63,961 nucleotides of DNA, filler included, from Octopus bimaculoides (GCF_001194135.2; 7 parts of 7 records of this genome joined end to end with filler, not necessarily neighbours in it), one strand, 5' to 3'. Positions 1-15,084 are shown, counted from the whole stretch's first letter. Notes: a model not told the origin generated them from the sequence alone. Numbers and translations are program-made.

Positions 1-2
1 TG

Positions 3-295
3 TGGAATCTAAAAACAGAAACAATTCCTATCATAGTAGGTGCCTTAGGTATAATAAAAAAATATTCAGACAAATACATAACAAAAACACCAGGACTTAC
101 AAATATATATAACATACAGAAAATTGCACTACTGGGTACTGCACACATTCTACGCAAAACACTTTCAATACAGTAAACATAAGAGCACCACAGCAAACCA
201 CAGCACATACCCAAGGCGCACAGAGCTGCGCTCGGTAGTGAAGTGAAAGTACGTTATAAAAATAAAACTACTGAATAATAATAATAATAATAATC
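3..295 (+). mobile_element. 3' end of R4/Dong-type (RLE) non-LTR retrotransposon with (TAA)n tail
   Basis: Frame from nt 3 reads WNLKTETIPIIVGALGIIKK...KIALLGTAHILRKTLSIQ* (stop 174-176), typical of the C-terminus of R4/Dong-clade ORFs. A ~95-nt 3' UTR and a TAA run follow. A near-identical copy lies on the minus strand at 16424-16780. Confidence 0.8.
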
Positions 296-349
296 ACGAC
301 GACACAAACTGCGAAAATAGTGCAGCAGTTAATCTCTGCTACGAGCCAG

Positions 350-900
350 GAACATCTATACTTTCAGTCATCAACTCCTACAATAACAGTACAAATGATT
401 GAAAACAATGAAGAGGCTGGGAGCGGATTGGAAGGAACTACCTTAAACTATGATGCACCTTCTAATCTTGCGTTCTCCAATTCACAAAGCAGAAAAACTT
501 CTAAACCAAGTAGATCCAATTGCAACTTCAAAGTTGGGAATAAATGCCCGTTACAAGCTCACTGCAGGAGGTTTAATGTGATCAACAAGTGCGCGGTCCT
601 TAATAAACTTCAAAACTTTACCAATATTTATACTGGAGCAACTGTTAATTTTAAACAAAGATATTCTGCACATTTAAACTCCTTTAAATATGAAAAACAG
701 AAAATCTACTTCTTTCACAGAGCATATCCCCTACCTTATGAAAAGGAATATGCCACATAACATAGCTTGGTCCATCATTGACCCAGATCCTCCATACCAA
801 GGCCAGCATCCCCCTTGTTGAATGTGTTTGAGGGAATCCTTACAAATTCTGCCACATAATCCTGCACAATTATTAAATAAGCAACATGAAACCTTTCTCT
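350..900 (+). mobile_element. Penelope-like element remnant, GIY-YIG endonuclease region
   Basis: ORF 320-760 contains NCNFKVGNKCPLQAHC...NVINKCAV...IYTGAT-NFKQRYSAHLNSF. Downstream in another frame is IAWSIIDPDPPY...C*MCLRES. This matches the degenerate CNC-CPL-C linker, GIY-YIG motif and C-terminal WSI/CxxC pattern of PLE endonucleases. Confidence 0.75.
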
Positions 901-1206
901 ACGTGTGCTCACATATTTACAAGTCATTCGTGTTTTATCTCAAGTCTAATTGTAGTAAAGCTTCTGCTTCTCACTAACAAATAGTCTAGGCATTATATGA
1001 GCTCACTTCATTTAATTTATATATCCACAGAGTCATCATATCCTTTGATCCTTTCTTTTATAGATCCTAATTCTCTCCTTTATTTCATATTTAACGCATC
1101 TCACCTAGACTATAACTAATAGAATATCTTCTCAGTTACACACACTCACTAAATTAATAGAACAACACTAGGCCTTTTCGGATCTCGTTTCTTTCATTCG
1201 CAAAAT

Positions 1207-1542
1207 GAAGATCCCTTCGGTCATGAATGACCATGGGATTACATCTAGAAAGTTGCCCTCCGAGGTACAAGTCCGGGCAAGGTTGCTTGGGGAAGGCCAG
1301 CAGTCGCCCATGCATACCAGCTTCCTCTCTCCACACCATTGATGTTATCCAAGGGAAAAGCAAAGGCCGATACAGCTTGGCACCAGTGATGTCGCAACTC
1401 ATTTCTACAGCTGAGTTAACTAGAGCAACGTGAAATAAAGTGCCTTGCTCAAGAACACAACACGAAGCCTGGTCCGGGAATCGAACTCTCAACCCCACGA
1501 TCGTAAGCTCGACGCTCCAAGCACTGAGCCGCGCGCCTTCAC
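1207..1542 (-). mobile_element. tRNA-derived SINE with CORE-like segment
   Basis: Minus-strand head GTGAAGGCGCGCGGCTCAGTG has an A box, then B box GTTCGATTCC, followed by TGTGTTCTTGAGCAAGGCACTT resembling the CORE domain. Confidence 0.8.
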
Positions 1543-2475
1543 TTTCGCAAAATATGCATTGTTTAAAAGGAAGTAAAAAATCTGAAAATCGACTATAATA
1601 ATGTAGCCTTCCAGTTTCATTGCTTTGAAGGTTTGATGTTGTGGAGAAAAAAATCGGAGACAAAAGTTACAGAGGTTTAAAAATGAAAGAAACTGGGTAT
1701 TTTTAGCCAATAGCGAGACAGAAATTCTCTGCGTTTGGTGGAGCGGTGTCAACTTTAAGGTTGTACCCTGTAAAATTTATAGTTTAGCGTCTGACTTGTT
1801 CATTGTAGGTCTCTAAAAAAACAGAAATACCTAATAAAATCAACATGTATCATCTTACTGTTTCTTTTCTTTCTTCATTGATTCTATGTTTTTATACTTT
1901 TTAAAAATTTATTATATTAATACATTTCTCTGCATGTGTTTACTGTATGTGTACTACAGTATTATGTATACCTGCCATGTATTTATGTACATCATTAATA
2001 TATAAGTGCATATGTATGTGTGTGAAAAGGGGACGTCTGTCTTCAAAACTCCAGCGTTGAGTAACGTTTTCATGTTTGGATTTGTAAACTACGATAAGAA
2101 TAACACTGGTCAACAAAGAATTTGTTCCAAGGAAACGAATACCTGGATCTTATATGTTTTTGCGTGCAGAATTCAAAAATAATGTCAAATTATTTGTATC
2201 ACCCACAATTTCTCTGTTCCACGATATCCCTCTCAGTTCCCGTTACGTGTGCTAAATTTCAGTTAAGCTGTTGAAATGTGAAGCTAATGGTTAAAGAAAT
2301 ACCCCTAATTAAAATTTTTATGAATAGAATTAACGTAGTCAAATCATAAATCCCGCTATCTGAGTCAATGAGTCCCAAAAATATATGAAATGAAAAATAT
2401 GTAAAAATACTAAGTGTGAAAAATCAACATAGACAACAGCGGCACAGACAATAGTGAACCACAATACAGCATGCG

Positions 2476-2489
2476 GTTGTCATAGTAAC
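2476..2489. promoter_or_regulatory. RFX X-box-like motif
   Basis: GTTGTCATAGTAAC fits GTHNYY-AT-RRNAAC. Motif match only; may lie inside a repeat. Confidence 0.3.
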
Positions 2490-3514
2490 AAACTGCTAAT
2501 GCCAAATAGTAACAAGCTGCTAATTACCTAAATTTCCCAAATTTAATTCCAAACAAGATCAAGTTCTTTAATTTACGAGATAAAGTAATTCTTTGGTCGT
2601 AATCAAAATTCAGAGTCGCATCGATACACCAAAATTGAAAGCAATCTGCAAAATTAATGAGAAAGACTAGATCCGCTTTTTCTTCTTTTGTTATTCACGG
2701 ATACATATAACAGTACATAAAATTAATCTAACTTTCCATTTCCTAACTTTAATTTATTTACTTATATGATATCAAGTTTCTATTGTTCTTTAGCAGTATT
2801 TATTTCCTTCATTCCTGAGCCCTATAATTTCTTTATAGGGCTCAGGGATTATCTTTAGCTTAATTTTTATTTGTCATATTTAAATCTTTATTTTTTCCCC
2901 TCTATTACCAGCGAGCATACACCTTCATTAACATTACAAATCTTTAAATTTAATATTACGGACATCTATTTCTAGTACTACTATAACCAAGTGAGCTCTA
3001 AATCTCCCCTTCCTTCTAGTAGTATCTGGCTCCCCTTAGTTTTAGTTCATCATTATATTTTACAACCGTTTTATTACCATCACAGCACCCTTTCCCCCAA
3101 TTTTGCCAACTCTGGCCAGTGGTTGTGGTCACTTAAAGGATGACAATCTCTACAATCTGTTATTCTTCGTCCATTATCTATGTGTCTATATATATGCACA
3201 CCCTTGCCTGTTCTGACAATTCACAATACTAACTAGTATATATCTACTCTGCTGCTTCTACCTGTCTCTCTTTCCTCCACTTATATTTCTATCTAACCCT
3301 CATTCACTCTCTATTCAAAATTGGAACTGATTACATCCTCTGTTCTTTGGCATCGATTATTATTGAACATTGTAAAATTGCAAATTAGCCACCCATATTA
3401 TTTATAATTTTCACTTTTACCGTTTATGAAATCAGCGTGTGATTTCAACGGAAATCTTACAAACTGACAAGGCGAGCTGACTGAGAGCCACTGGCACGGT
3501 GAGANNNNNNNNNN

Positions 3515-3845
3515 ATATATATATATATATATATACATGTACATTTATCTCCGGTATAATTTAAAACAAACAGTAAAAGGTTGTCATTATATTACTCGGG
3601 GTTTCAAATGTCGGAGCGAAGAGCTACATACATTCTCATCGGCTATTAATAGAAACAAACGCTATGAAAAACCGTTGAATAAAAGGGAAGTTACTCTGTG
3701 TAGACAAAGAAAAAAGAAGAGAGTTGAAAAAATACACGCAGTCATATTCTCACAATACATAAGCATAAACCTCCTGCGTTCACAACATCTACATACGTAC
3801 ACACTCACACAAACATGTATACGTACATGCACACACGTATATATA

Positions 3846-3888
<43 letters not shown>

Positions 3889-4150
3889 GTGTATGCAACC
3901 TCATCATTATATACACATAGGTGCTTATATGCATACACGTAACATAATACATATATATTTAGACGTTTATACGTATAAATATACGTATATATATATATAG
4001 ACATACATTCACACTCCCGCATATATATATAAATCAAAGGGTGTATGCATGAAAGTCGCACATATGCACTGGACACAGTCTTACACTCATATATATACAT
4101 ATACACATACACACGCACACACATATACATATAATACATACACATATACA
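3515..4150. repeat. Compound (AT)n/(GT)n/(AC)n microsatellite field
   Basis: Directly visible dinucleotide runs flanking N gaps. Confidence 0.9.
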
Positions 4151-4419
4151 CGCACACACACGTACACNNNNNNNNNNNNNNNNNNNNNNNNNNNNNNNNN
4201 NNNNNNNNNNNNNNNNNNNNNNNNNNNNNNNNNNNNNNNNNNNNNNNNNNNNNNNNNNNNNNNNNNNNNNNNNNNNNNNNNNNNNNNNNNNNNNNNNNNN
4301 NNNNNNNNNNNNNNNNNNNNNNNNNNNNNNNNNNNNACACACACAATTAAAAAGGGAAAAGGAAAAAGGAAAATATATATAAAAAAATATAAAAAATAAT
4401 GGAAGTTAAAACATATGGG

Positions 4420-4960
4420 GAAGCTTGTGCTTTCAGCCGTGATCTTGGGTGATTACAGCCTTGATTTTGGGTGGGGCTGGGGGTGGGGCAAAATCATAAC
4501 AGGTATTTTGTGACATGTGAACATGATCCAAAAAGTTCAGTTCTTGAATTTGAACATGTAGCAGGGTTGGCAAATTCATGGATAAAAGTGAGTATAGATC
4601 GGCGGAAGAAACGGGTAGTGAGTTCGAAACTACTGATAAGCGAGATAGCTTACGAAAAGTCGAAGGTTTTCTTTACCATGTATCTTTGAATAAAGATTAG
4701 GCGTGTATGTGTTCGGTAAAGTGGGGAATGTTGAGACCAAATGTTTTCTTATCGTCTGTCATTTCATAAGGTATTAGGATGTGTGTCTGCAATGGTTCAA
4801 GACATCAGTCTTATGGTTAGGGCAGGTTTATCCTGGAATAGAATTTAGACCTTTTCAAGTAAGTATAAATAGCATCTCATTAAGGCTCTAAACGACACGT
4901 GCTGTATGAGGCACCTTTTTTCAAAACAGACCAGAAGATTTTAAATAGTGGGCACCCTGC
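4420..4960 (-). mobile_element. Decayed Penelope-like reverse transcriptase fragment
   Basis: Minus translation LPNTYTPNLYSKIHGKENLRLFVS resembles the PLE RT motif P-LY-LPKIHK...PLRPIVS. An upstream KKGA..Y segment resembles DKG. Many stops. Confidence 0.45.
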
Positions 4961-5519
4961 TTCTTTAAAATCCCATATGTGTTTGGCCAGGCTCGTCGCA
5001 GTTCTATTTTCCGGGTACTTAAAAGAATTTCTATGTAGATATAGCTTCGTTTTGAAAGAATTTCCTATAGCCCTCTATATGTTTTGCATGTATCCGTGTT
5101 ATCCATCTGGAATTACACTGATTTGTTATGATAATCAGCCACCAAATTGATTTCAAATGCTTATTCTTTGATTTAAATTACATTACATCACATTATAGTA
5201 CATGTACAATTACGATTTTAATTCAGTATTCAGAACAACTATGCGACAAACGGGAATGTGAAACATTGCGTAACACATTTGTGATGATTTTGCAGTATTA
5301 ATGAACGCACATTAATCTACCTTTCGTATTCAAGTTCTGTCTTCTTCCGCTTTGTGTGCTTACTTGCGTGTGTATCTGTGTATGTATGTATGTATGTATG
5401 TATGTATACGTACACACACATATATATATACATATGTGTGTGTGTAAAAGTTTATATATATGTGTGTTTGTGTTTATATAATAATCCTTATTCTGACTAT
5501 TTATGTTTTGTTGATCCTT

Positions 5520-5534
5520 ATATTTTCATTATAG
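5520..5534 (+). promoter_or_regulatory. 3' splice acceptor immediately before the start codon of the propeller gene
   Basis: ttatattttcattatAG ends at 5534, followed by attaaccATGG (ATG at 5542, good Kozak context). Implies an upstream non-coding exon. Confidence 0.55.
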
Positions 5535-5541
5535 ATTAACC

Positions 5542-8500
5542 ATGGAGGACAATGCAGGAAATATTTCGAAAAAACTTATACCTCTGAAAACAGCTTTCTG
5601 TGACACAACAAGTGACAGTAATCATGCAGTCTGCAATAGAAAGTGTAACTATTGGAGAAATAATGGCTCAAGAACGGAAATGTTACAGAAACAAACTTCC
5701 AGTCAATTAACAACAAAGCAAAAAGGACACAAAGGAAGGCATAATATAATTAGAAGACGAGATGTTTTAGACAAACGCATATATTACACAAAAGTTTATG
5801 CATATGAAGACAAAATTAATATGTTGATAAATACTCGGAAGAAGATATGTACTTTTCTAAAACGTGTAGGATTGGATAAAAATATTTTTATGCAAGATTT
5901 TACACAGAGAATAGAATTTCTGCAGCAAAGAATTAAGAAATACGATTACAGGCAAGATTTTATTATTTTTGGAAAAATTAAAATGTTTCTGGAACAATAT
6001 TTGAAAAAACATATTTTACAACATAAACACAAGACCGTTGAGGCACCAAAAATTAAAAACGCATTCCGTCCTGTTTCTCCGGTTGTGTCCAAGCAAGCAG
6101 ACATCGAACAATTTGATGAAAACTCATGTAATTTAATATCTAGTATCGTTGTCATTCAAGGTGGGATACTAACTTATTCTCGTCATGGCAAGAGAATATG
6201 TTGTGTAGGAATAGATGGTGACAGAAATGATATCAATTGTCCATCTTCTGTCACTGATTTCACCAGAATCGGTGAAGAAACTGTTCTAGCCACCCTTCCT
6301 TTCCGTCAAATCATTCTTATTATCAGCCCGTCAAGTTGTNNNNNNNNNNNNNNNNNNNNNNNNNNNNNNNNNNNNNNNNNNNNNNNNNNNNNNNNNNNNN
6401 NNNNNNNNNNNNNNNNNNNNNNNNNNNNNNNNNNNNNNNNNNNNNNNNNNNNNNNNNNNNNNNNNNNNNNNNNNNNNNNNNNNNNNNNNNNNNNNNNNNN
6501 NNNNNNNNACAACATTTTAATATCGTTTGCCAATATTAATAGGGTCACTTCATACAATCTGGGTGGCCAGCAGTTATTTGAGGTATACACCAATTCGCTG
6601 GACATCCCAACGCACATCACCGTGTACCACAACCATTTTTATGTCTTCCAGGGACATATTATTTATAGGATTTCCTGTACAGGTGGTGTGTCACAGAGGG
6701 AAATTGGAACGAAATGTCAGCATATTTGGTGCAAATACCATATTTTTGATTGATTACTTTGGTGTTCCTCGTACTATTAGAATGACCAAAGACTTTTGGC
6801 CCAGATTATCTTCCTGCCGCCAATTACGCACCCCTACTTTGGATGACTGTATTTATACTGAGGATTTCCGCTATATTACAAATATTCTACCTATGTCGTC
6901 ATCATCGTTATTAATATTCTACAGGAATACAAAAGCCATACTTTTCACTGATGTTGGAGAACAAATTAGCCAAAATTATTTAACTTTTCCTTTCGTTCCT
7001 TCACTCTGTTGTCGATTGAAGTCAAACACATTTCTGGTGTTTTATCCTGAAATTGAAAATCTTCAGGTTATTAAATGTCCTGAACTAACCAAGGGCCATT
7101 TACTCAAGGTCCACACTGATTACATTAAATTATGTAATATTGTATCAAATAAGTGTTTAGCTCTGACCAACAGTGAAAACAAAGTAGGGGTACAAATCCT
7201 ATTGGTTAAGGAGGATAAAGTTGACGTCATTAACAGAATACCATTAGAACATGGCTATGTTACCATTGCTGCAACTCCAATAAATTTTGTCGTTGTAGAC
7301 GGAAGGAAACATAAACTGGCATTTTATTCCACTTCTGGTGAGGAGCTTTTTGAAAAATACCTTCAGTTCTACGGCTATCCCCATCATATCTACTCTGACA
7401 ATGTATATTACTATGTTCTGTTCAAGAGAGAGTCTTTTGTAATATGTTACGATATATACGGAGAGATTAAATGGCAGTGGAAACTACCTTTGACTGTTTG
7501 CCCTCACATTACTGTTTTCCAAGGAACTGTTTATATGGTGGACATTGTACACAATAGAATTCTTCTTTACAAGTATCATAACTGGTCTGACTGTTATTTG
7601 CGCATCAAAAATCCTTATATCAGAAATCTAGATATAAGATTGAAGGGAAATGCAAACAACAAAGTACTCATTGCTGAAACAATTCATCTTTCAACTGGAC
7701 AGTTGGTCATGTCTGACACAAACAATGATTGCTTGTTATATATTTCTAATGAAGGAGACATTCTGTCTACACTAACCCTGCCGTCTACAGCGACGGATAT
7801 ATGTCGATGGAACTGCAATCAAATAGGCATCACTCTACCCTTAGAAAAACAATTACGGGTTATTGGAAACTTATCACAGAGATTTCGAACTGTATCATTA
7901 AGCTACCCTTACGTACGGGTGCGTAACTTAGGTATGGGTCATATTGTTTGTTATTGTGATAAACCATCTCATCATATAGATATCGTATCAATGAAAAATG
8001 ATAAGCAATTCGAAATATTTTGGGCATTTAAAATTCCTTTTGTAGTAAAGTCTTTAACAATAGAAAATGAAACTGTATTAATTGTCACTAAAAAGAAAGT
8101 ATTTAAGTACACAAATGATCGTCGTCGTATTTATATTCAGCGTCGCTACCATCGTCGTATTTGTGGCCATAAGATGAAGCCCACTGTTTTACTGTCCCAA
8201 ATGAAACCTTCACCCAATCTCTACGGTGGATGTATTGATGAAATGTATGTTTATCTGATAGACAACAGCCGCATGTTTGCTATAAAGGACAATAGCTTTG
8301 TGGTGAAAGATCACGTTAGAAATAATCAACTTAACATGCACGCTGACTGCGTAGATGTATTTTCTAGAAACATTTGTATCAGTGAAATGTTGTCCTCTGC
8401 AATATATCTACAGGATCTGACAGTTTCTGATGAAGCTCGACATCTTGATGTTGTCTATCCGTGTTTGGAAGACAAATTACTAGTGGAATTTAATTGTTTG

Positions 8501-10942
8501 GTTATTACTGACAATAACCTGATTGCAGGATTTGACATGCATAATCAATATATTAAGATACTAACATTTGATGGTCAATTAATGGACTCTGTCAAATTGA
8601 GTGTTTGTGCTATCAGCATGTGTCGATGGCAGTCCAACACACTGGTTATTGCGACGCATGAAGAAAAAAAACGACTATTGACATTAAAAGTGGAATTTCC
8701 ACTATCGTTGATAACTTACCAAACGAGAAATAAGTATGCGCATGTCGCTTGTTTGTCAGGTAATTTATTGGTGTGTTGTACGGAAGACGAAAATCGCACG
8801 TTGCATATCGTTGATATTGATGAAATACATTCGATTGTGAATGTACTAAAACGAAGGACAATAGCTTTGTGGTGAAAGATCACGTTAGAAATAATCATTC
8901 GATTGTGAATGTACTAAAACGTGAGGCATTAACAAGAAACAGACGTACTGATAGTAACTCCTTGGGTATCATCTGTGCTATTACAGTTGCTGCTAATGAT
9001 GATATCATTGTCAGTGATGAATATTTCATACATTTCTTGAACTGCAATGGTCAGTACTTACATTCACTTAGACACGGCATGTGGCATCTCAGGATATTTA
9101 ACTCCATGACAGCTGATAACTGTTATTTGTACATTCATGGTCCGTGGGAGAGGTATATAAACTGCTGTAACTATGATAAAGTTGTGCGTTTGACTCTGAC
9201 TGGTGAATATAATAGAATATTTTTAAATAAAAGTACTTGTAAAGTTATAGTAGATTTCAGCTGTATAAACTGTAAAGGACCAAGGTTTGTTGGATACCAC
9301 TACCTCAATCGTAAATTGCACATCGAAGGCTTGTTTAACCATAATCGGGAAAGGTTTACCGTTTCTCGATTACAAACAAACAACTCTCCTGTTCAAGTAA
9401 AAGATATCGATATCTCTGACGAGGGACACACTGTGGTGAGTGAAAAAATTAACAATGGCAATGTTAAAATATTAGATAGAGACGGGGATCTGCTACATCA
9501 CAAAGATCTTGGAACTTTAGTTGGTGGTGTGTGTTTTACAAAAGAAAGAGATATAATGGTCACAGTTCCTAATAGACGAGAAATATTTCAACTGAAGAAG
9601 CAAGATTTAGTAAAATACAAAGTCTGGCAAAGCCGAGAGCCTTACGGTGTAATATGTAGAATAGTGGGAAACATTTACTGGTGTGTACATATTAACTTGA
9701 CTGAATACCATTGCATAAAGATTGATGGTGACCAGCTGAATGTTCTTGAATCTATGTCGTTATTAAAAGTTGATTCTCGCCTTCATTTCCCTTCCATTAC
9801 GTCTCAAACGAACAAAGAAATATTCAGCAATGAATTAATTAAATTGAAACACAATGCAGAAGATGGAGGAGAAAGAAGTANNNNNNNNNNNNNNNNNNNN
9901 NNNNNNNNNNNNNNNNNNNNNNNNNNNNNNNNNNNNNNNNNNNNNNNNNNNNNNNNNNNNNNNNNNNNNNNNNNNNNNNNNNNNNNNNNNNNNNNNNNNN
10001 NNNNNNNNNNNNNNNNNNNNNNNNNAATGGCGATGGTTCCTCTTTCAATTCCTACATGGGATGAACCAGTAAATTATGATGACAATAACAGTAGAGACTA
10101 CAGCAGCAAACTAATTAAGTTAGATGACAATGTCAGTGTGTTTATGTTTAGAGACACAGTCACAGTGATCACCACAGCTACAGGTGGTATACTTCAACAT
10201 AAACTACTACTACAACAACCACTAGATATATGTCGGTGGACAGATGAAAGTTTCATAGTCGTCGTTGGTACAAAACTGATGTTCTTCAAACGGGATCTCT
10301 CTCATTTAAAAACCATCAATACTGAAAAATATTACAACAGGGTTTATAAAAACAACGACAATCAGCTCGTGTGTGGTGGTCATTTTGTTGGCGACATAGC
10401 TGAAGGTGGAGGCTATCATTACTATGTGGATGTCATTGATATCGATGGTGGGACATGTAAATACAGTCGTGAAGTTTGTTCTGGGGTAGCGGAGTTAGAT
10501 GCGTGGTTTGTGAAGTTTGGTGTAGTGTGTGATATAGTAGTGACATCTGGTGGTGATATCGCTGTTGTTAAGTGGGAGAAGGGAAGATGGTCGTATCCTG
10601 TATGAATTCTGTTGGTATAGGGAACATTTGTTCAGGAGTATAAAACTACCAATAATCTTGAAGAATTGGATATACAAACCTTATCTAACCACACATGGTG
10701 AATATTTTTATATAACAGATGAACATAACAATATTTACCAAATACCTAGATATAATGAACACCAAACATCCGAAGATATTGAAAACCTAACAACTGAAGA
10801 TGTTTCACAATATTTACTCCTCAGTGGTGATGATAATGAAGTATCCACAGTTCTTGGTTTTGATATTTCAAACAATTCTTTCTTGGTGTTTGGAATTATT
10901 CCAGGACATCGATCTTTTGGTTTTATTCATTATGAGAAATAA
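5542..10942 (+). CDS. Large single-exon protein with degenerate B-box/coiled-coil-like N-terminus and ~6 tandem NHL/WD-like beta-propeller units (mollusc TRIM-NHL-like); disrupted as assembled (possible recent pseudogene)
   Basis: ORFs 5542-6753, 6527-8875, 8869-10605 and 10550-10942 join into one ~1770-aa reading frame if frameshifts near 6718 and 10585 and the 68-bp insert 8854-8921 are corrected. A blade motif recurs at ~6241, 6990, 7781, 8600, 9511 and 10211 (DICRWNCNQIGITLP, SMCRWQSNTLVIAT, DICRWTDESFIVVV, SLCCRLKSNTFLVFYP, DFTRIGEETVLATLP, GVCFTKERDIMVTVP). AATAAA overlaps the stop at 10938-10943. Two N gaps lie inside. Confidence 0.75.
8828..8921 (+). repeat. 26-bp direct duplication enclosing a 44-bp copy of 8285-8328
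   Basis: CATTCGATTGTGAATGTACTAAAACG occurs at 8828-8853 and 8896-8921. Segment 8854-8897 is identical to 8285-8328. Confidence 0.9.
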
Positions 10943-11235
10943 ATATTTTCCTAAATATTAGAGTTAGAGTTTGTTGTTCGTTTTATTATTGTTATTGGGT
11001 TCAAAACTGAACGTACATCAGTTAAATTTCATTCTACATATTATTAAAAATTATTATGGTAACATTTTTTAGCATACATAGTCTCTCCTTATCTCTTATA
11101 TAACATAGACCTGTGTGAATGTATTCACTTTTCATGCGAAAACGGCTGCGCGAATTGCTTTCCATACTTGGAATGCATGAATAATTTGAGCTCGGGTACA
11201 TAATAGGGTCTTCAGTCTATCTTTTTAATAAAAAC

Positions 11236-11275
11236 TATGACTATCAGAAATACTCGGCGTTGCTCGGGTTAAAGA
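11236..11275 (+). mobile_element. Helitron/Helentron-type terminus remnant
   Basis: ACTATCAGAAATACTCGGCGTTGCTCGGG resembles the ACTAG...CCCGGCGTTGCCCGGG terminal hairpin of non-autonomous rolling-circle elements. Confidence 0.45.
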
Positions 11276-12230
11276 AAACCGTCGTCTAGATTATGCAGCT
11301 CTCAACTGCTAGTAACTGAGATACCAACTTCCTACGTAACTCTGCAACCCATACCAGCATGGAACATAGACGTTAAGTGAAATGTGAAAAGAAAGTTTTC
11401 GATTCATATACGTATATAAAGTAAATACACGTTTGTCTAACTTATTTCGTAACCAAAAAAAAACATGTACAGATTATAAACAATGAAAGGCCGTACATAG
11501 TGTACACACACAGACACACAGACACAGACACACACACACACACAGACACATACAGACACACAGACACACACACACACNNNNNNNNNNNNNNNNNNNNNNN
11601 NNNNNNNNNNNNNNNNNNNNNNNNNNNNNNNNNNNNNNNNNNNNNNNNNNNNNNNNNNNNNNNNNNNNNNNNNNNNNNNNNNNNNNNNNNNNNNNNNNNN
11701 NNNNNNNNNNNNNNNNNNNNNNNNNNNNNNNNNNNNNNNNNNNNNNNNNNNNNNNNNNNNNNNNNNNNNNNNNNNNNNNNNNNNNNNNNNNNNNNNNNNN
11801 NNNNNNNNNNNNNNNNNNNNNNNNNNNNNNNNNNNNNNNNNNNNNNNNNNNNNNNNNNNNNNNNNNNNNNNNNNNNNNNNNNNNNNNNNNNNNNNNNNNN
11901 NNNNNNNNNNNNNNNNNNNNNNNNNNNNNNNNNNNNNNNNNNNNNNNNNNNNNNNNNNNNNNNNNNNNNNNNNNNNNNNNNNNNNNNNNNNNNNNNNNNN
12001 NNNNNNNNNNNNNNNNNNNNNNNNNNNNNNNNNNNNNNNNNNNNNNNNNNNNNNNNNNNNNNNNNNNNNNNNNNNNNNNNNNNNNNNNNNNNNNNNNNNN
12101 NNNNNNNNNNNNNNNNNNNNNNNNNNNNNNNNNNNNNNNNNNNNNNNNNNNNNNNNNNNNNNNNNNNNNNNNNNNNNNNNNNNNNNNNNNNNNNNNNNNN
12201 NNNNNNNNNNNNNNNNNNNNNNNNNNNNNN

Positions 12231-15084
12231 NCTAGCTATTTTAACAACCAACCTTGTCCCATTGCAGAGTCTGGGTGCATCAAGGTTCTCAATAGCATTG
12301 TGGGAGCTCCTGTTTTCGTGATCAGAATGTGTGGTGGAAATCCTGGTGGGTGAAGTGAATTGAGGAACTTAACTGGGTAATGTGTTGCCTGTTCTTGATC
12401 AAGGACAGAGTCAATTCATCTGTATGAACATTCAGGTCCTGGGAGCTGAGGCAACAAATTTAGATTCAGCTTGTCTTCAGCATCATTCCTTGGTGCCAGA
12501 ATTGTCCTTTCAGATAACCACTTGTGACTTTTATAGTTTGTGGCAATGTTTGGAAACACCTTGCTCTTCAGTTCTTCAAGGGAGGCAGTCATATTGCCGC
12601 ATGGGAGGTGGTGCAGACTATCTTCTGGATCTTGTGGAAGTTTGCCATTTCTAATGTCAAGTAACTTGTTGGAGAACTGTGCGGCTAACAGGTTACCACG
12701 AATGTGAACCCTCATGCTGGTTATCAGAGTAAGCTGCTTGACATGTTGCCAGATACATGAGGACCTGATTTAAGCTCTCAGCTCATCTGCCCTTGTTCCT
12801 CTGGGAATGACAGGCAGCGTTTACCTGAAGTCACCAGCTATGAAGAGGGTGACACAATCCATGATCTTATTGTTTCTGAAGTCTTGTAGTGTTGTATGTA
12901 GCTCTTCAAAGGCTGCCTTATGGGACATTGTTGCCTCATCCCAGACAATGAATTTGGCATCTGTAAGGAGCTTTGCTAACGCTGTATTCATGGATATGTT
13001 GCATAAAGGGGATTCATTTTGGATGAGGTTCAAAGGCAGCTTGAATGCTGAATGGACTGTTCCTCCACCTATTTGGAGTGTGGCTGCAATTCCAGAGGAT
13101 TCAACAGCCCAAGCAATCTTCTGTCTCACCTTGGCAAGGAGCAGGTTGATCAATAATGTCTTTCCTGTGCCTCCAGGAGCATCTAAGAGGAACCCACCTG
13201 TGTTATTGTCCACAGAATTGGTTCCTTTTTATTGACGACTGCTTGCAAACTTTCATTAGAGAGCCAACCCGATGATAAATCTGACCTTGGACCTTGGAAG
13301 TTTGCACGAATCCTGGTTCAGTCATATTTCTTGTGACTCCAAATGATGTCATCTGTAGTGCAACATTGTACTGTCTAATTTTGCTTTGGAAGCGCTTGGA
13401 ATCTTGCTCAGTTGATGGTAACAGTTTCTTTAATGGCTCTGGAAGTTTAACCTTTCCACCACTGCAGCACATTGCAGGTGTCTCTGCAGACTACTTTTTG
13501 CTTTACAATGTATGAACTCAGTTATCATTGCACCAATGGAAACTCTAGTGTCATCTGCATAATGAACTGCTGGATCATAATTGAAATCTCCTTCATAGAA
13601 GTTGCTTCTCTGAGTTGTTACAACTGCTCTTCTTTCTGCAGTGGATATCCTATTCTTGTCAGCCGTGCATACCTCTGTTCATCACTTTGAGATGCTCTGA
13701 CTTTTGTAGTGTACAGTCTGTTCATTTCTTGGCGTGCTTCCCTTTCTGCAGCTACCTCTCTTTGTCTGGACAAAGACATTCTTTTGGCTGACCTTGATAT
13801 TGTAGACACAGTTGACACTTTCCTCCTAGGCATGGTTATATTCGTATACAGAAATACACGAGTGCAGAAAAGAGTAAACAATGAAAATAACTTGGTAAAG
13901 GAAATTATGTTTCTTAATACGACGGGTAGAAAGTAAATAAAAAATTTTAGCGGAAAATAAAGTATTGTACGGGTTGAAGCAAAATTTGTCACTCAGTGAA
14001 CCACAGAGCCAGTATCGAAGGAATTAGAAAAAAACCGTCAACAAAAGAAAAACACAAAACCGTACGGATTGAAGTGAAATTTACGGAAATACTTCGGTCA
14101 GTAAATTATGAAATTACTTACATTATTAATTGTGAACTTTCTGTCAGTAATTTGAAAACTTAAACTTACAGTGAAAACAACAGCGATATATTAACAAATT
14201 TGACACTTCGTTCTGTTTCTGTGTGATTATGGCAGCAAGCTCCAGTAACTTCGCTTCAATTATGGAAACATTGAAAACAGAGAAGCATATTTTAAAAATT
14301 AAAACCGAAAGTTAAATGTTTGTTTTATAGGCATATTTAAATTGTAATTAAACATATTTTAATTATTTGTTTAATGTTTGTTTCTTTTTGTCATTCAGCA
14401 TTGAAGTGGTTGTGAGGCGAGCTAAAAATAACAGCTAAATAAATTGTTTTGGATAAATCTTTTAAATTTAAGTTTATATGCCAACATCTCGCTCAGAGAT
14501 ATAAAACTAGTTTTCTCTTTTGAATTAACATAAACATTTATTTACATGAAAGAAAATTACCGGAGAACTTTCATCTAATTCTTCTAAATCTTTCTCTTAA
14601 CAATTGTAATGTGGTTATCGCATTCGCATTAAACACTGGCGGTTGTGAGGTGTGCTAAAAATAACAGCTAAATAAGATTTAATTACATGAAAGAAAATTA
14701 CCGGAAACATAACACGTATTGTTTACAAATATTGACAACACGTGCTATTTTCAGGATATTGACGACAAAATGTGCAGTCACGCACAAAATGACAGCTTCC
14801 AAATTCTGCTTCCTGATTAGGTGAGAATGATCAATCTTTAAACCGCTATAACTTTTTCAAAACATTTTTCTGGAAAAAAAGGAATAACTCCCGCAGTTCA
14901 GTTTGGGCAAGTGTATTATTGTGCCAAATTTAAAAAAATTCGGTAAACTTTAATTTTTAGAGCCGCTGGCCACCAAACAGAAAAGATCCTACATATCTAT
15001 ATGTATGCATGTATGTATGCATGTATGTATGTATGTATGTATGTATGTATGTATGTATGTATGTATGTATGTGTGTGTGTATGT
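12231..15084 (-). mobile_element. Helitron, defective, with Rep (HUH) domain deleted
   Basis: ATG at 13833 (MPRRKVS...REARQE...SQSDEQRYARL), then CCSGGKVKL...IRQYNVALQMTSFG...QGQIYHRVGSL. This joins at ~13255 to PIF1-type helicase motifs DAPGGTGKT, SSGIAAT, IVWDEATM, GDFR and RTILAPRND. The 5' non-coding part has the typical AAATTTGGCAC motif and an (ATGT)n microsatellite running into a gap. Confidence 0.9.

What the first reader, a model, noticed from the sequence alone, without database searches (positions are those of the whole stretch)
5542..10942. Giant single-exon protein built from six tandem diverged beta-propellers
Seen: one blade motif recurs six times at ~700-840-nt spacing (6241, 6990, 7781, 8600, 9511, 10211), each preceded by a similar first blade. 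This defines ~250-280-aa units, the size of a six-bladed propeller. The N-terminal ~190 aa has a few Cys/His and a charged helical stretch. Established: molluscs carry expanded TRIM-like families with B-box/coiled-coil plus usually one NHL-type propeller, often discussed in immunity. Inference: this is a lineage-specific concatemer of six such domains. The units are so diverged that the expansion is old, and the protein could be a multivalent recognition or scaffold protein not described as such.
Basis: partly seen in the sequence, partly recalled or inferred. Interest (0 to 1): 0.75.

Follow-up and report, generated by a model that had tools for sequence, protein, structure and literature searches.

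The report
Broken copy of octopus six-propeller gene
The region is a frame-broken, probably recently inactivated copy of an uncharacterised, intron-less gene family found only in octopuses and argonauts, whose roughly 1,700-residue proteins are a short helical head followed by six very diverged NHL-type beta-propeller-like units.

Summary
The six-fold repeat is real. Profile comparison of the six units gives in-register matches (best E 3e-13). Single units match single-propeller NHL-like proteins, one of which matches the TRIM2 NHL domain at E 2e-14. AlphaFold2 models of two relatives show consecutive all-beta units of four-stranded blades. Their best fold matches are chains of six-bladed propellers (LRP2/megalin, LRP4).

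The window does not hold one open reading frame. The coding line is split into four frame pieces by three lesions:
- a 5-nt deletion after 6726;
- a 68-nt templated insertion at 8854-8921;
- a shift within 10575-10600.

Both N gaps sit inside collinear homology and keep the nominal frame.

Intact single-exon relatives of 1662-1925 aa exist in Octopus bimaculoides, O. vulgaris, O. sinensis and Argonauta hians. All are labelled "uncharacterized" and none has a Pfam domain. No RING or B-box is present, so the family is not a TRIM. Units 3 and 5 are not confidently complete propellers. An exhaustive search of 1.84 billion representative proteins found only 30 matches. Function is unknown. The best guess is an intracellular multivalent binding scaffold, in a family that gains and loses copies.

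The parts
5542..5736 (+). Start codon and basic, lysine-rich N-terminal stretch, variable in length among relatives and predicted disordered
   Evidence: Relatives P0016, P0024 and P0025 start at 5542. AF2 pLDDT is below 35 for the equivalent residues 1-65 of P0003. The region has pI 9-10 and no conserved Cys/His.
5737..6087 (+). Conserved helical N-terminal region (about 95 aa of helices plus a linker). It is not a zinc finger and is unrelated to the repeat units.
   Evidence: AF2 helices 66-159 of P0003 map to 5737-6012. hhalign of this region against every unit gives probability of 1% or less. No Pfam hit.
6088..6781 (+). Unit 1 (propeller-like, 23-24 strands in the model of P0003). It is interrupted by assembly gap 6340-6508 and by frameshift 1.
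   Evidence: (unit 1 vs 2, 94.7%). About 59 aa are missing in the gap.
6727..6727 (+). Frameshift 1: a 5-nt deletion relative to all six paralogous loci examined, switching frame 1 to frame 2
   Evidence: Nucleotide alignment with L001-L004, L006 and L007. Protein alignments change frame here.
6836..7573 (+). Unit 2 (propeller-like, 23 strands in six groups of four)
7670..8437 (+). Unit 3, the best conserved unit of the family. About 19 strands are modelled, followed by a conserved but low-confidence segment.
   Evidence: Invariant columns cluster here. Mean pairwise identity is 0.50, the highest of all units. Model and mapping.
8438..9327 (+). Unit 4 (24 strands in the model of P0019), carrying the 68-nt insertion
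   Evidence: unit 4 vs 6, E 3e-13; vs the single-propeller protein P0048, E 7e-13
8854..8921 (+). A 68-nt frame-breaking insertion: a 42-nt copy of 8285-8326 followed by a second copy of the 26 nt at 8828-8853. Removing it restores the frame. It is absent from all relatives.
   Evidence: Relatives align across it, skipping it.
9397..10100 (+). Unit 5, shorter than the others (about 218 aa in relatives). Three blades are confidently modelled (9397-9759), then a low-confidence, variable linker that contains assembly gap 9881-10025.
   Evidence: (unit 4 vs 5, 91.9% over the first 119 columns)
10108..10939 (+). Unit 6 (about 23 strands), acidic, containing frameshift 3. The stop codon follows at 10940-10942.
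   Evidence: Five relatives end exactly at 10939.
10575..10600 (+). Frameshift 3 (frame 1 to frame 2), within a purine-rich run in a stretch of variable length. Its exact position cannot be fixed.

Best explanation
The region 5542-10942 is one member of an Octopoda-restricted family of intron-less genes.

Shown:
- The encoded proteins run to about 1,660-1,925 aa. They have a basic disordered start, a helical region of about 100 aa, and then six tandem, anciently duplicated units.
- The units are highly diverged relatives of the NHL-type six-bladed beta-propeller.
- The copy in this window is not intact as assembled. A 5-nt deletion, a 68-nt templated insertion and a third shift break the frame. 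Two assembly gaps remove about 59 and about 35-50 codons.

Inferred:
- The copy is most likely a recently inactivated pseudogene in a family that gains and loses copies. Less likely, it is an intact gene damaged by assembly.
- Intact members are soluble intracellular proteins, with no signal peptide or membrane segment. Each propeller would offer a binding face, so the chain could act as a multivalent platform for proteins or RNA, as single NHL domains do in TRIM-NHL proteins.
- Unit 3 is the conserved core. The C-terminal units 5 and 6 are the fast-evolving part.
For: Frame structure and lesions.
Gaps collinear with relatives.

Family and its range:
- 30 Octopus hits.
- An exhaustive profile search gave only 30 hits in 1.84e9 proteins.
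- Names and species. Argonauta belongs to Octopoda.

Intact single-exon members: P0032 (5139 nt), P0034 (5025 nt) and P0063 (5154 nt).

Purifying selection:
- Orthologue pair P0032/P0063 has dN/dS 0.40 overall, 0.28-0.37 from the N-terminus to unit 4, and 0.73-0.87 in units 5-6.
- The window against paralogues gives 0.46-0.53.

Repeat homology.
Link to NHL.
Fold: AF2 models with regular four-strand blades and pLDDT around 80 inside units. Foldseek puts LRP2/LRP4 six-bladed propeller arrays on top.

Other copies also broken: L001 has 1 frame change, L002 has 2, L003 has 2, and L004 has many plus deletions.

Recent inactivation:
- There are no in-frame stops in about 1,670 read codons.
- The window deviates at 9.7% of invariant family sites, against 8.6% for the intact singleton P0066.

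No signal peptide or clear membrane segment.
Against: - Whether the three lesions are real cannot be decided without reads. The locus has two gaps, and the 68-nt insertion with duplicated flanks could be a gap-closing artefact.
- The models are of relatives (55-62% identical), not of the window's own sequence. I could not inspect coordinates, so ring closure is not shown.
- Units 3 and 5 are incompletely modelled.
- No Pfam NHL match reaches threshold in the window or in the family.
- The proposed function rests only on analogy. No expression, localisation or binding data were available.
Confidence: 0.7

Rival explanations
1. The gene is intact and functional in the animal. The three frame breaks, like the two N gaps, are assembly or gap-closing errors in a region made difficult by many paralogues.
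For: - No in-frame stop lies within any of the four frame pieces.
- Conservation at invariant family sites is no worse than in an intact singleton paralogue.
- The 68-nt insertion has the look of a failed gap closure, with 26-nt flanks duplicated around foreign filler.
- Two real gaps lie in the same 5.4 kb.
Against: - Frameshift 1 is a clean 5-nt deletion in non-repetitive sequence, far from either gap. All six paralogues carry the 5 nt.
- Three independent lesions would all have to be errors.
- Paralogous loci from three other assemblies also carry frame breaks, and one (L004) is clearly decayed. Pseudogenes are therefore normal in this family.
Confidence: 0.3
2. The repeated 5.5-kb unit is the cargo or coding part of a mobile element, such as a large DNA transposon or a retro-copied element, rather than a host gene family.
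For: - It is multi-copy, intron-less and often frame-broken.
- Similarity between copies ends about 30 nt upstream and about 150 nt downstream of the ORF.
- Transposon debris lies nearby: a PIF1-like helicase fragment at 12821-13213 and a dispersed 335-bp repeat at 1207-1543.
Against: - No member has a transposase, reverse transcriptase, integrase or other mobile-element domain.
- Two subfamilies are conserved at over 90% protein identity as single genes on large chromosomes in three Octopus species.
- An orthologue pair shows dN/dS of 0.40.
- Many copies lie on one chromosome, in a cluster rather than dispersed.
- No terminal repeats flank the ORF.
Confidence: 0.04
3. The frame changes are biological signals (short introns or programmed frameshifts), and the locus makes a full-length protein.
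For: An existing annotation of this locus (P0033, 1478 aa) bridges the breaks with three 'introns'.
Against: - Those 'introns' simply skip gap 1 plus frameshift 1, the 68-nt insertion, and gap 2. The model then reads 6545-6727 in a frame that no relative uses, and it stops early at 10603.
- Intact relatives have no introns at these points.
- The breaks are a deletion and an insertion relative to paralogues.
Confidence: 0.02

Closest known systems
NHL-repeat six-bladed beta-propeller domains of TRIM-NHL proteins (TRIM2, TRIM3, TRIM71/LIN-41, Brat, Thin) and the expanded single-propeller TRIM-like proteins of bivalves
   Same: - Each unit is about 250-280 aa of four-stranded blades.
- Units 3 and 4 match single-propeller NHL-like proteins by profile (E 9e-9 and 7e-13). 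One of these matches the TRIM2 NHL domain at E 2e-14.
- The only PDB sequence hits of the family profile, though not significant (E about 1), are TRIM2/TRIM3 NHL domains.
- The weak outside hits include a RING plus B-box protein of a freshwater mussel and a Mytilus NHL-like protein.
   Different: - Six units sit in one chain instead of one.
- There is no RING, no B-box and no detectable TRIM coiled coil.
- The Pfam NHL model does not reach threshold.
- Whether RNA or protein is bound is unknown.
LDL-receptor-related proteins with arrays of YWTD six-bladed propellers (LRP2/megalin, LRP4, LRP5/6)
   Same: These are the best fold matches of both models (E 1e-23 to 1e-18). They too are several six-bladed propellers of the same structural superfamily strung along one chain.
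   Different: - LRPs are secreted or membrane receptors with EGF and LDL-A modules between propellers, a signal peptide and a membrane anchor.
- Here the units follow each other directly. There are no EGF or LDL-A domains, no signal peptide and no clear membrane segment.
- There is no sequence-level YWTD match.
Intracellular multi-propeller scaffolds (DDB1, SF3B3, CPSF160, IFT-A and UTP WD40 tandem propellers)
   Same: They are the next best fold matches. They are soluble intracellular proteins in which two or three propellers form a docking platform.
   Different: They are seven-bladed WD40-like propellers in twos or threes, unrelated in sequence and conserved across eukaryotes. The present family has six NHL-type units and is confined to octopods.
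RefSeq/UniProt 'uncharacterized protein' entries of octopods (e.g. XP_014776406.1 LOC106873529, XP_014786156.1 LOC106880634 and XP_014788575.1 LOC106882419 of O. bimaculoides; GAB1597371.1 of Argonauta hians)
   Same: They share the architecture and are collinear with the window from start to stop, at 30-65% identity per unit.
   Different: Those entries are intact ORFs, whereas the window's copy is frame-broken and gapped. None carries any functional or domain annotation.

Membership tests
NHL-repeat beta-propeller superfamily (Pfam PF01436, six-bladed propeller clan) | Sequence match to the Pfam NHL repeat model at or above its gathering score | tested here: not met
   No Pfam hit at E of 1 or below in any window piece. 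The best in the family is P0036 at 18.5 bits against a cut-off of 20.
NHL-repeat beta-propeller superfamily (Pfam PF01436, six-bladed propeller clan) | Demonstrable homology of a whole unit to a bona fide NHL propeller domain | tested here: met
   Unit 4 matches P0048 (282 aa, NHL 22.1 bits) at 97.8%, E 7e-13, over 207 columns. Unit 3 matches P0052 at 95.7%, E 9e-9. P0052 has NHL at 31.2 bits and matches the TRIM2 NHL domain at E 2e-14. The link is transitive, not direct.
NHL-repeat beta-propeller superfamily (Pfam PF01436, six-bladed propeller clan) | Six four-stranded antiparallel blades per domain | tested here: inconclusive
   In the AF2 models of relatives, units 1, 2, 4 and 6 have 23-24 strands in groups of four. 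Unit 3 has about 19 strands. Unit 5 has 12 confident strands.
NHL-repeat beta-propeller superfamily (Pfam PF01436, six-bladed propeller clan) | Closed ring (first and last blades in contact) | not testable with these tools
   Model coordinates could not be inspected. Only secondary structure, pLDDT and Foldseek matches were returned.
TRIM (tripartite motif) proteins | N-terminal RING finger | tested here: not met
   No RING hit in the window pieces or in full-length members. No conserved Cys/His in the N-terminal alignment.
TRIM (tripartite motif) proteins | B-box zinc finger | tested here: not met
TRIM (tripartite motif) proteins | Coiled coil between the B-box and the C-terminal domain | tested here: inconclusive
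   Helices 66-159 are predicted at pLDDT 50-60. There is no profile similarity to the helical parts of P0049 or P0051.
LRP-type YWTD propeller arrays | YWTD (Ldl_recept_b) repeats with EGF spacers, a signal peptide and a membrane anchor | tested here: not met
   No such Pfam hits. No hydrophobic N-terminus or clear membrane segment. The resemblance is in fold only.
Octopod six-unit family (LOC106873529-like uncharacterized proteins) | Collinear similarity from the N-terminal helical region through all six units to the shared stop | tested here: met
   Per-unit identity to P0032 and P0064 is 45-69%.
Octopod six-unit family (LOC106873529-like uncharacterized proteins) | Uninterrupted single-exon ORF of about 5 kb | tested here: not met
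   The window has three frame breaks and two gaps. P0032, P0034 and P0063 are uninterrupted.

The most novel reading that the evidence does not exclude
Octopods evolved, before argonauts and octopuses split, a protein type not seen elsewhere: a head-to-tail chain of six NHL-type propellers on a helical stalk. A few members stay conserved. A chromosomal cluster of copies duplicates, diverges fastest in the C-terminal units and decays. That is the pattern expected of an intracellular recognition or restriction system (against viruses or transposons) built on a new multivalent scaffold.
Probability: 0.15. Interest if true: 0.75.

Novelty: new variant of a known kind. Interest (0 to 1): 0.45.

Why it matters
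Octopus genomes are known for lineage-specific gene expansions, yet this family has no name, no Pfam domain and no paper that I could find. It can now be described as a six-fold array of NHL-type propeller-like units, an architecture otherwise seen only loosely in extracellular LRP receptors. That gives a concrete starting point for structural and binding studies. It also gives a candidate for octopod-specific cell biology or immunity. For genome annotation, the existing gene model of this locus is an artefact that splices around gaps and frameshifts, and many family members are split or fused in current annotations.

Tried and rejected
- Self-BLASTP of the stitched 1776-aa conceptual protein gave no off-diagonal hit. 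Shallow unit profiles gave only weak signals. Only deeper full-length profiles worked.
- Pfam on the six window pieces found nothing credible. Two sub-threshold chance hits, TEN_TERT and Conotoxin O, were discarded.
- A PDB sequence search with the family profile gave only E of about 1.
- The second and third word-indexed protein searches returned few proteins: 12 and 2.
- No genomic record was found for P0019 or for the window's own model P0033, so neither the species nor the wider context of the window was obtained.
- Literature searches for NHL or propeller expansions in octopus or cephalopods, and for six LOC identifiers, found nothing relevant.
- The N-terminal profile has no similarity to the helical parts of TRIM-like mussel proteins.
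- The C-terminal half of unit 5 could not be matched to blades 4-6 of the other units.
- Rfam and tRNA scans of the window were empty.
- Mobile-element, intron and programmed-frameshift readings were considered and rejected, as set out under the rival explanations.
- Horizontal transfer from bacteria was considered and rejected. The two nearest outside hits that carry a name are both from bivalves.
Full report
**What is in the window**

The sequence is AT-rich animal DNA with CA/TG microsatellites and five N runs within the piece (1-15084). Between 5542 and 10942 there is no single open reading frame. ORF listing and three-frame translation show four long stop-free pieces:
- frame 1 from 5542 to 6726;
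- frame 2 from 6728 to 8853;
- frame 1 from 8923 to about 10590;
- frame 2 from about 10589 to 10939, with the stop at 10940-10942.

No stop codon lies inside any piece.

**The gaps, tested first**

Gap 1 (6340-6508) and gap 2 (9881-10025) both lie inside collinear protein similarity to every relative. In both cases the two flanks are in the same nominal frame.
- Gap 1: 32 relatives have 58-60 residues where the window has 57 codon-equivalents.
- Gap 2: nine relatives have 34-39 residues against 49 codon-equivalents, in a linker of variable length.

The flanks are therefore continuous in order and orientation. Gap lengths are only estimates, so the frame across them cannot be proven.

**The three frame breaks**

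1. After 6726 the window lacks 5 nt that all six paralogous loci examined possess.
2. At 8854-8921 there is a 68-nt insertion. It consists of a 42-nt copy of 8285-8326 followed by a second copy of the 26 nt at 8828-8853. Deleting it rejoins the two frames through an Arg codon, and no relative has it.
3. Between 10575 and 10600, in a purine-rich stretch of variable length, the frame shifts again. The exact position cannot be fixed.

An annotated protein for this very locus exists (P0033, 1478 aa). It matches the window at 97-100% in four blocks. Its three 'introns' merely skip gap 1 with frameshift 1, the insertion, and gap 2. It reads 6545-6727 in the wrong frame and ends early at 10603. It is an annotation artefact.

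**Relatives**

- A search with the longest piece found 30 proteins, all from Octopus bimaculoides, O. vulgaris or O. sinensis. All were 'uncharacterized' or 'hypothetical', and only one carried Pfam domains (a model with C2H2 zinc-finger hits). All were collinear fragments of the same layout.
- An exhaustive profile search of 1.84 billion representative proteins found only 30 hits.
- The hits include intact full-length members of 1662-1925 aa:
  - XP_014776406.1 (1712 aa) and an 85% identical O. sinensis protein, taken here as its orthologue;
  - two subfamilies that each fall into one 90%-identity cluster across the three Octopus species;
  - two proteins of Argonauta hians.
- Argonauta is an incirrate octopod.
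- The genes for P0032, P0034 and P0063 are uninterrupted single exons of 5139, 5025 and 5154 nt.
- Four other paralogous loci are collinear with the window at 72-78% nucleotide identity. They carry one, two, two and many frame changes. Some of those assemblies may, from my own knowledge rather than any tool result, be long-read based and so prone to indel errors.
- Similarity between copies is confined to the ORF plus about 30 nt upstream and about 150 nt downstream.

**The repeat**

I cut a 13-row alignment (12 full-length members plus the stitched window protein) into an N-terminal part and six units. Profile-profile comparison then gave in-register matches between units:

| Unit pair | Probability | E-value |
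|---|---|---|
| 4 vs 6 | 97.9% | 3e-13 |
| 2 vs 4 | 95.6% | 1.1e-8 |
| 3 vs 6 | 95.3% | 2e-8 |
| 1 vs 2 | 94.7% | 5.7e-8 |
| 4 vs 5 | 91.9% | 7e-7 |
| 3 vs 4 | 87% | 3.7e-6 |
| 2 vs 3 | 86% | 4.7e-6 |

The N-terminal part matches nothing. Typical unit lengths across the 12 full-length members are about 252, 262, 257-290, 266-349, 218 and 250 aa. Some members add C-terminal extensions.

All six units are present in Argonauta as well. The concatenation therefore predates the split of these lineages.

**What the units are**

- Pfam finds nothing in the window and only a sub-threshold NHL hit in one relative.
- The weakest hits of the exhaustive search are single-propeller proteins with NHL signatures. 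They include a RING plus B-box protein of the mussel Potamilus and a Mytilus protein.
- Unit 4 matches one of them (P0048, 282 aa) at E 7e-13 over 207 columns. Unit 3 matches P0052 at E 9e-9.
- P0052 matches the solved NHL domains of TRIM2 and TRIM3 at E 2e-14, and also Thin, TRIM71 and Brat.

The units are thus very diverged members of the NHL-type six-bladed propeller superfamily, by a transitive argument.

**Fold**

AlphaFold2 was run on two relatives that together cover the whole layout.
- P0003 covers the N-terminus to unit 4 and is 55-58% identical to the window.
- P0019 covers units 3-6 and is 55-62% identical.
- Mean pLDDT was 67 and 69, with about 80 inside the units and low values in the linkers.

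The models show a disordered start, helices at residues 66-159, and then all-beta units of regularly spaced four-strand groups:
- units 1, 2, 4 and 6 have 23-24 strands;
- unit 3 has about 19 strands plus a conserved low-confidence segment;
- unit 5 has only 12 confident strands, followed by a low-confidence linker. That linker is where the window's gap 2 lies.

Foldseek against the PDB puts LRP2/megalin and LRP4 first (E 1e-23 to 1e-18). These are chains of six-bladed YWTD propellers. DDB1, SF3B3, IFT-A and UTP multi-propeller proteins follow.

I could not inspect coordinates, so ring closure is not shown. 'Six complete six-bladed propellers' is supported for four units and open for units 3 and 5. 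The second half of unit 5 did not match blades 4-6 of the other units.

**The head**

The N-terminus is basic and variable, followed by a conserved helical region. It has no conserved Cys/His, no RING or B-box hit, and no similarity to the helical parts of TRIM-like mussel proteins. The family is therefore not a TRIM. No member has a hydrophobic N-terminus or a convincing membrane segment, so an intracellular soluble protein is inferred.

**Selection and state of this copy**

- The intact orthologue pair P0032/P0063 has dN/dS of 0.40. It is 0.28-0.37 from the N-terminus to unit 4 and 0.73-0.87 in units 5-6.
- The window against four paralogous loci gives 0.46-0.53.
- The window's copy departs from residues invariant in the other 12 members at 9.7% of such sites. 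The intact singleton P0066 departs at 8.6%.
- There are no in-frame stops.

The copy therefore evolved under constraint until recently. A clean 5-nt deletion away from any gap is hard to attribute to assembly. The 68-nt insertion could be either a templated insertion or a gap-closing artefact. I put a real, young pseudogene at about 0.6-0.65 and assembly damage to an intact gene at about 0.3.

**Mechanism (inferred)**

Single NHL propellers bind RNA or proteins on one face. This is established for Brat, LIN-41 and TRIM2/3, from my own knowledge. Six such modules on one chain, possibly paired through the helical head, would make a multivalent docking platform.

Three features are typical of recognition families under changing pressure:
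- a conserved core around unit 3;
- fast-evolving C-terminal units;
- a chromosomal cluster with many decayed copies.

None of this was tested.

**Comparison and novelty**

The nearest known kinds are TRIM-NHL propellers (homology of the unit), LRP-type propeller arrays (same idea of a chain, in an extracellular context) and DDB1-like scaffolds (intracellular multi-propeller platforms). The family fails the defining tests for TRIM and LRP membership.

The proteins are already in public databases, but without name, domain or literature. I rate the finding as a new variant of a known kind. The particular locus is an ordinary broken family member.

Noticed in passing
window 12821-13213 (minus strand); neighbouring minus-strand ORFs 12416-12715, 13203-13472, 13618-13992: A fragment of a PIF1-like helicase (Pfam PF05970, E 1e-28), as carried by Helitron-type transposons. 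The adjacent short ORFs gave no Pfam hit and may be frame-broken parts of the same element.
   Followed up: partly
window 1207-1543: A dispersed repeat of about 335 bp, found at 84-89% identity in unrelated positions of the O. sinensis and O. vulgaris loci (L001 twice, L003 once). Probably a short interspersed element. No tRNA or Rfam match.
   Followed up: partly
window 320-760 (+): An ORF with a weak, sub-threshold GIY-YIG nuclease hit (E 0.006, 17.4 bits against a cut-off of 22.6). It is possibly debris of a Penelope-like element.
   Followed up: no
window 8854-8921, source 8285-8326: The 68-nt insertion is a 42-nt copy of sequence 569 nt upstream, bracketed by a 26-nt duplication with a 2-nt overlap (CA) at the right junction. 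This looks like either template-switch repair or a gap-closing artefact.
   Followed up: partly
window 5542-10605 (protein P0033): The existing 1478-aa gene model of this locus invents three introns to bypass the gaps, a frameshift and the insertion. It translates about 60 codons in the wrong frame.
   Followed up: yes
L006 and L008 (P0032 / P0063), codons 1254-1712: In an intact orthologue pair the last third of the protein (units 5-6) has dN/dS of 0.73-0.87, against 0.28-0.37 for the rest. This could be relaxed constraint or positive selection at the C-terminal units.
   Followed up: partly
proteins P0064, P0065 (O. bimaculoides, O. sinensis), unit 6 region: Two members carry a long, extremely acidic extension in the unit 6 region (net charge -71 and -62).
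   Followed up: no
protein P0030 (O. vulgaris, 414 aa): A gene model that joins a fragment of this family to C2H2 zinc-finger domains. It is probably a fusion of neighbouring genes by the annotation pipeline.
   Followed up: no
window 3780-4400, 5300-5480, 11500-11577: CA/TG-type microsatellite tracts border the N gaps at 4168-4336 and 11578-12231 and lie just upstream of the gene. Their placement next to these two gaps suggests they may have stopped the assembly there.
   Followed up: no
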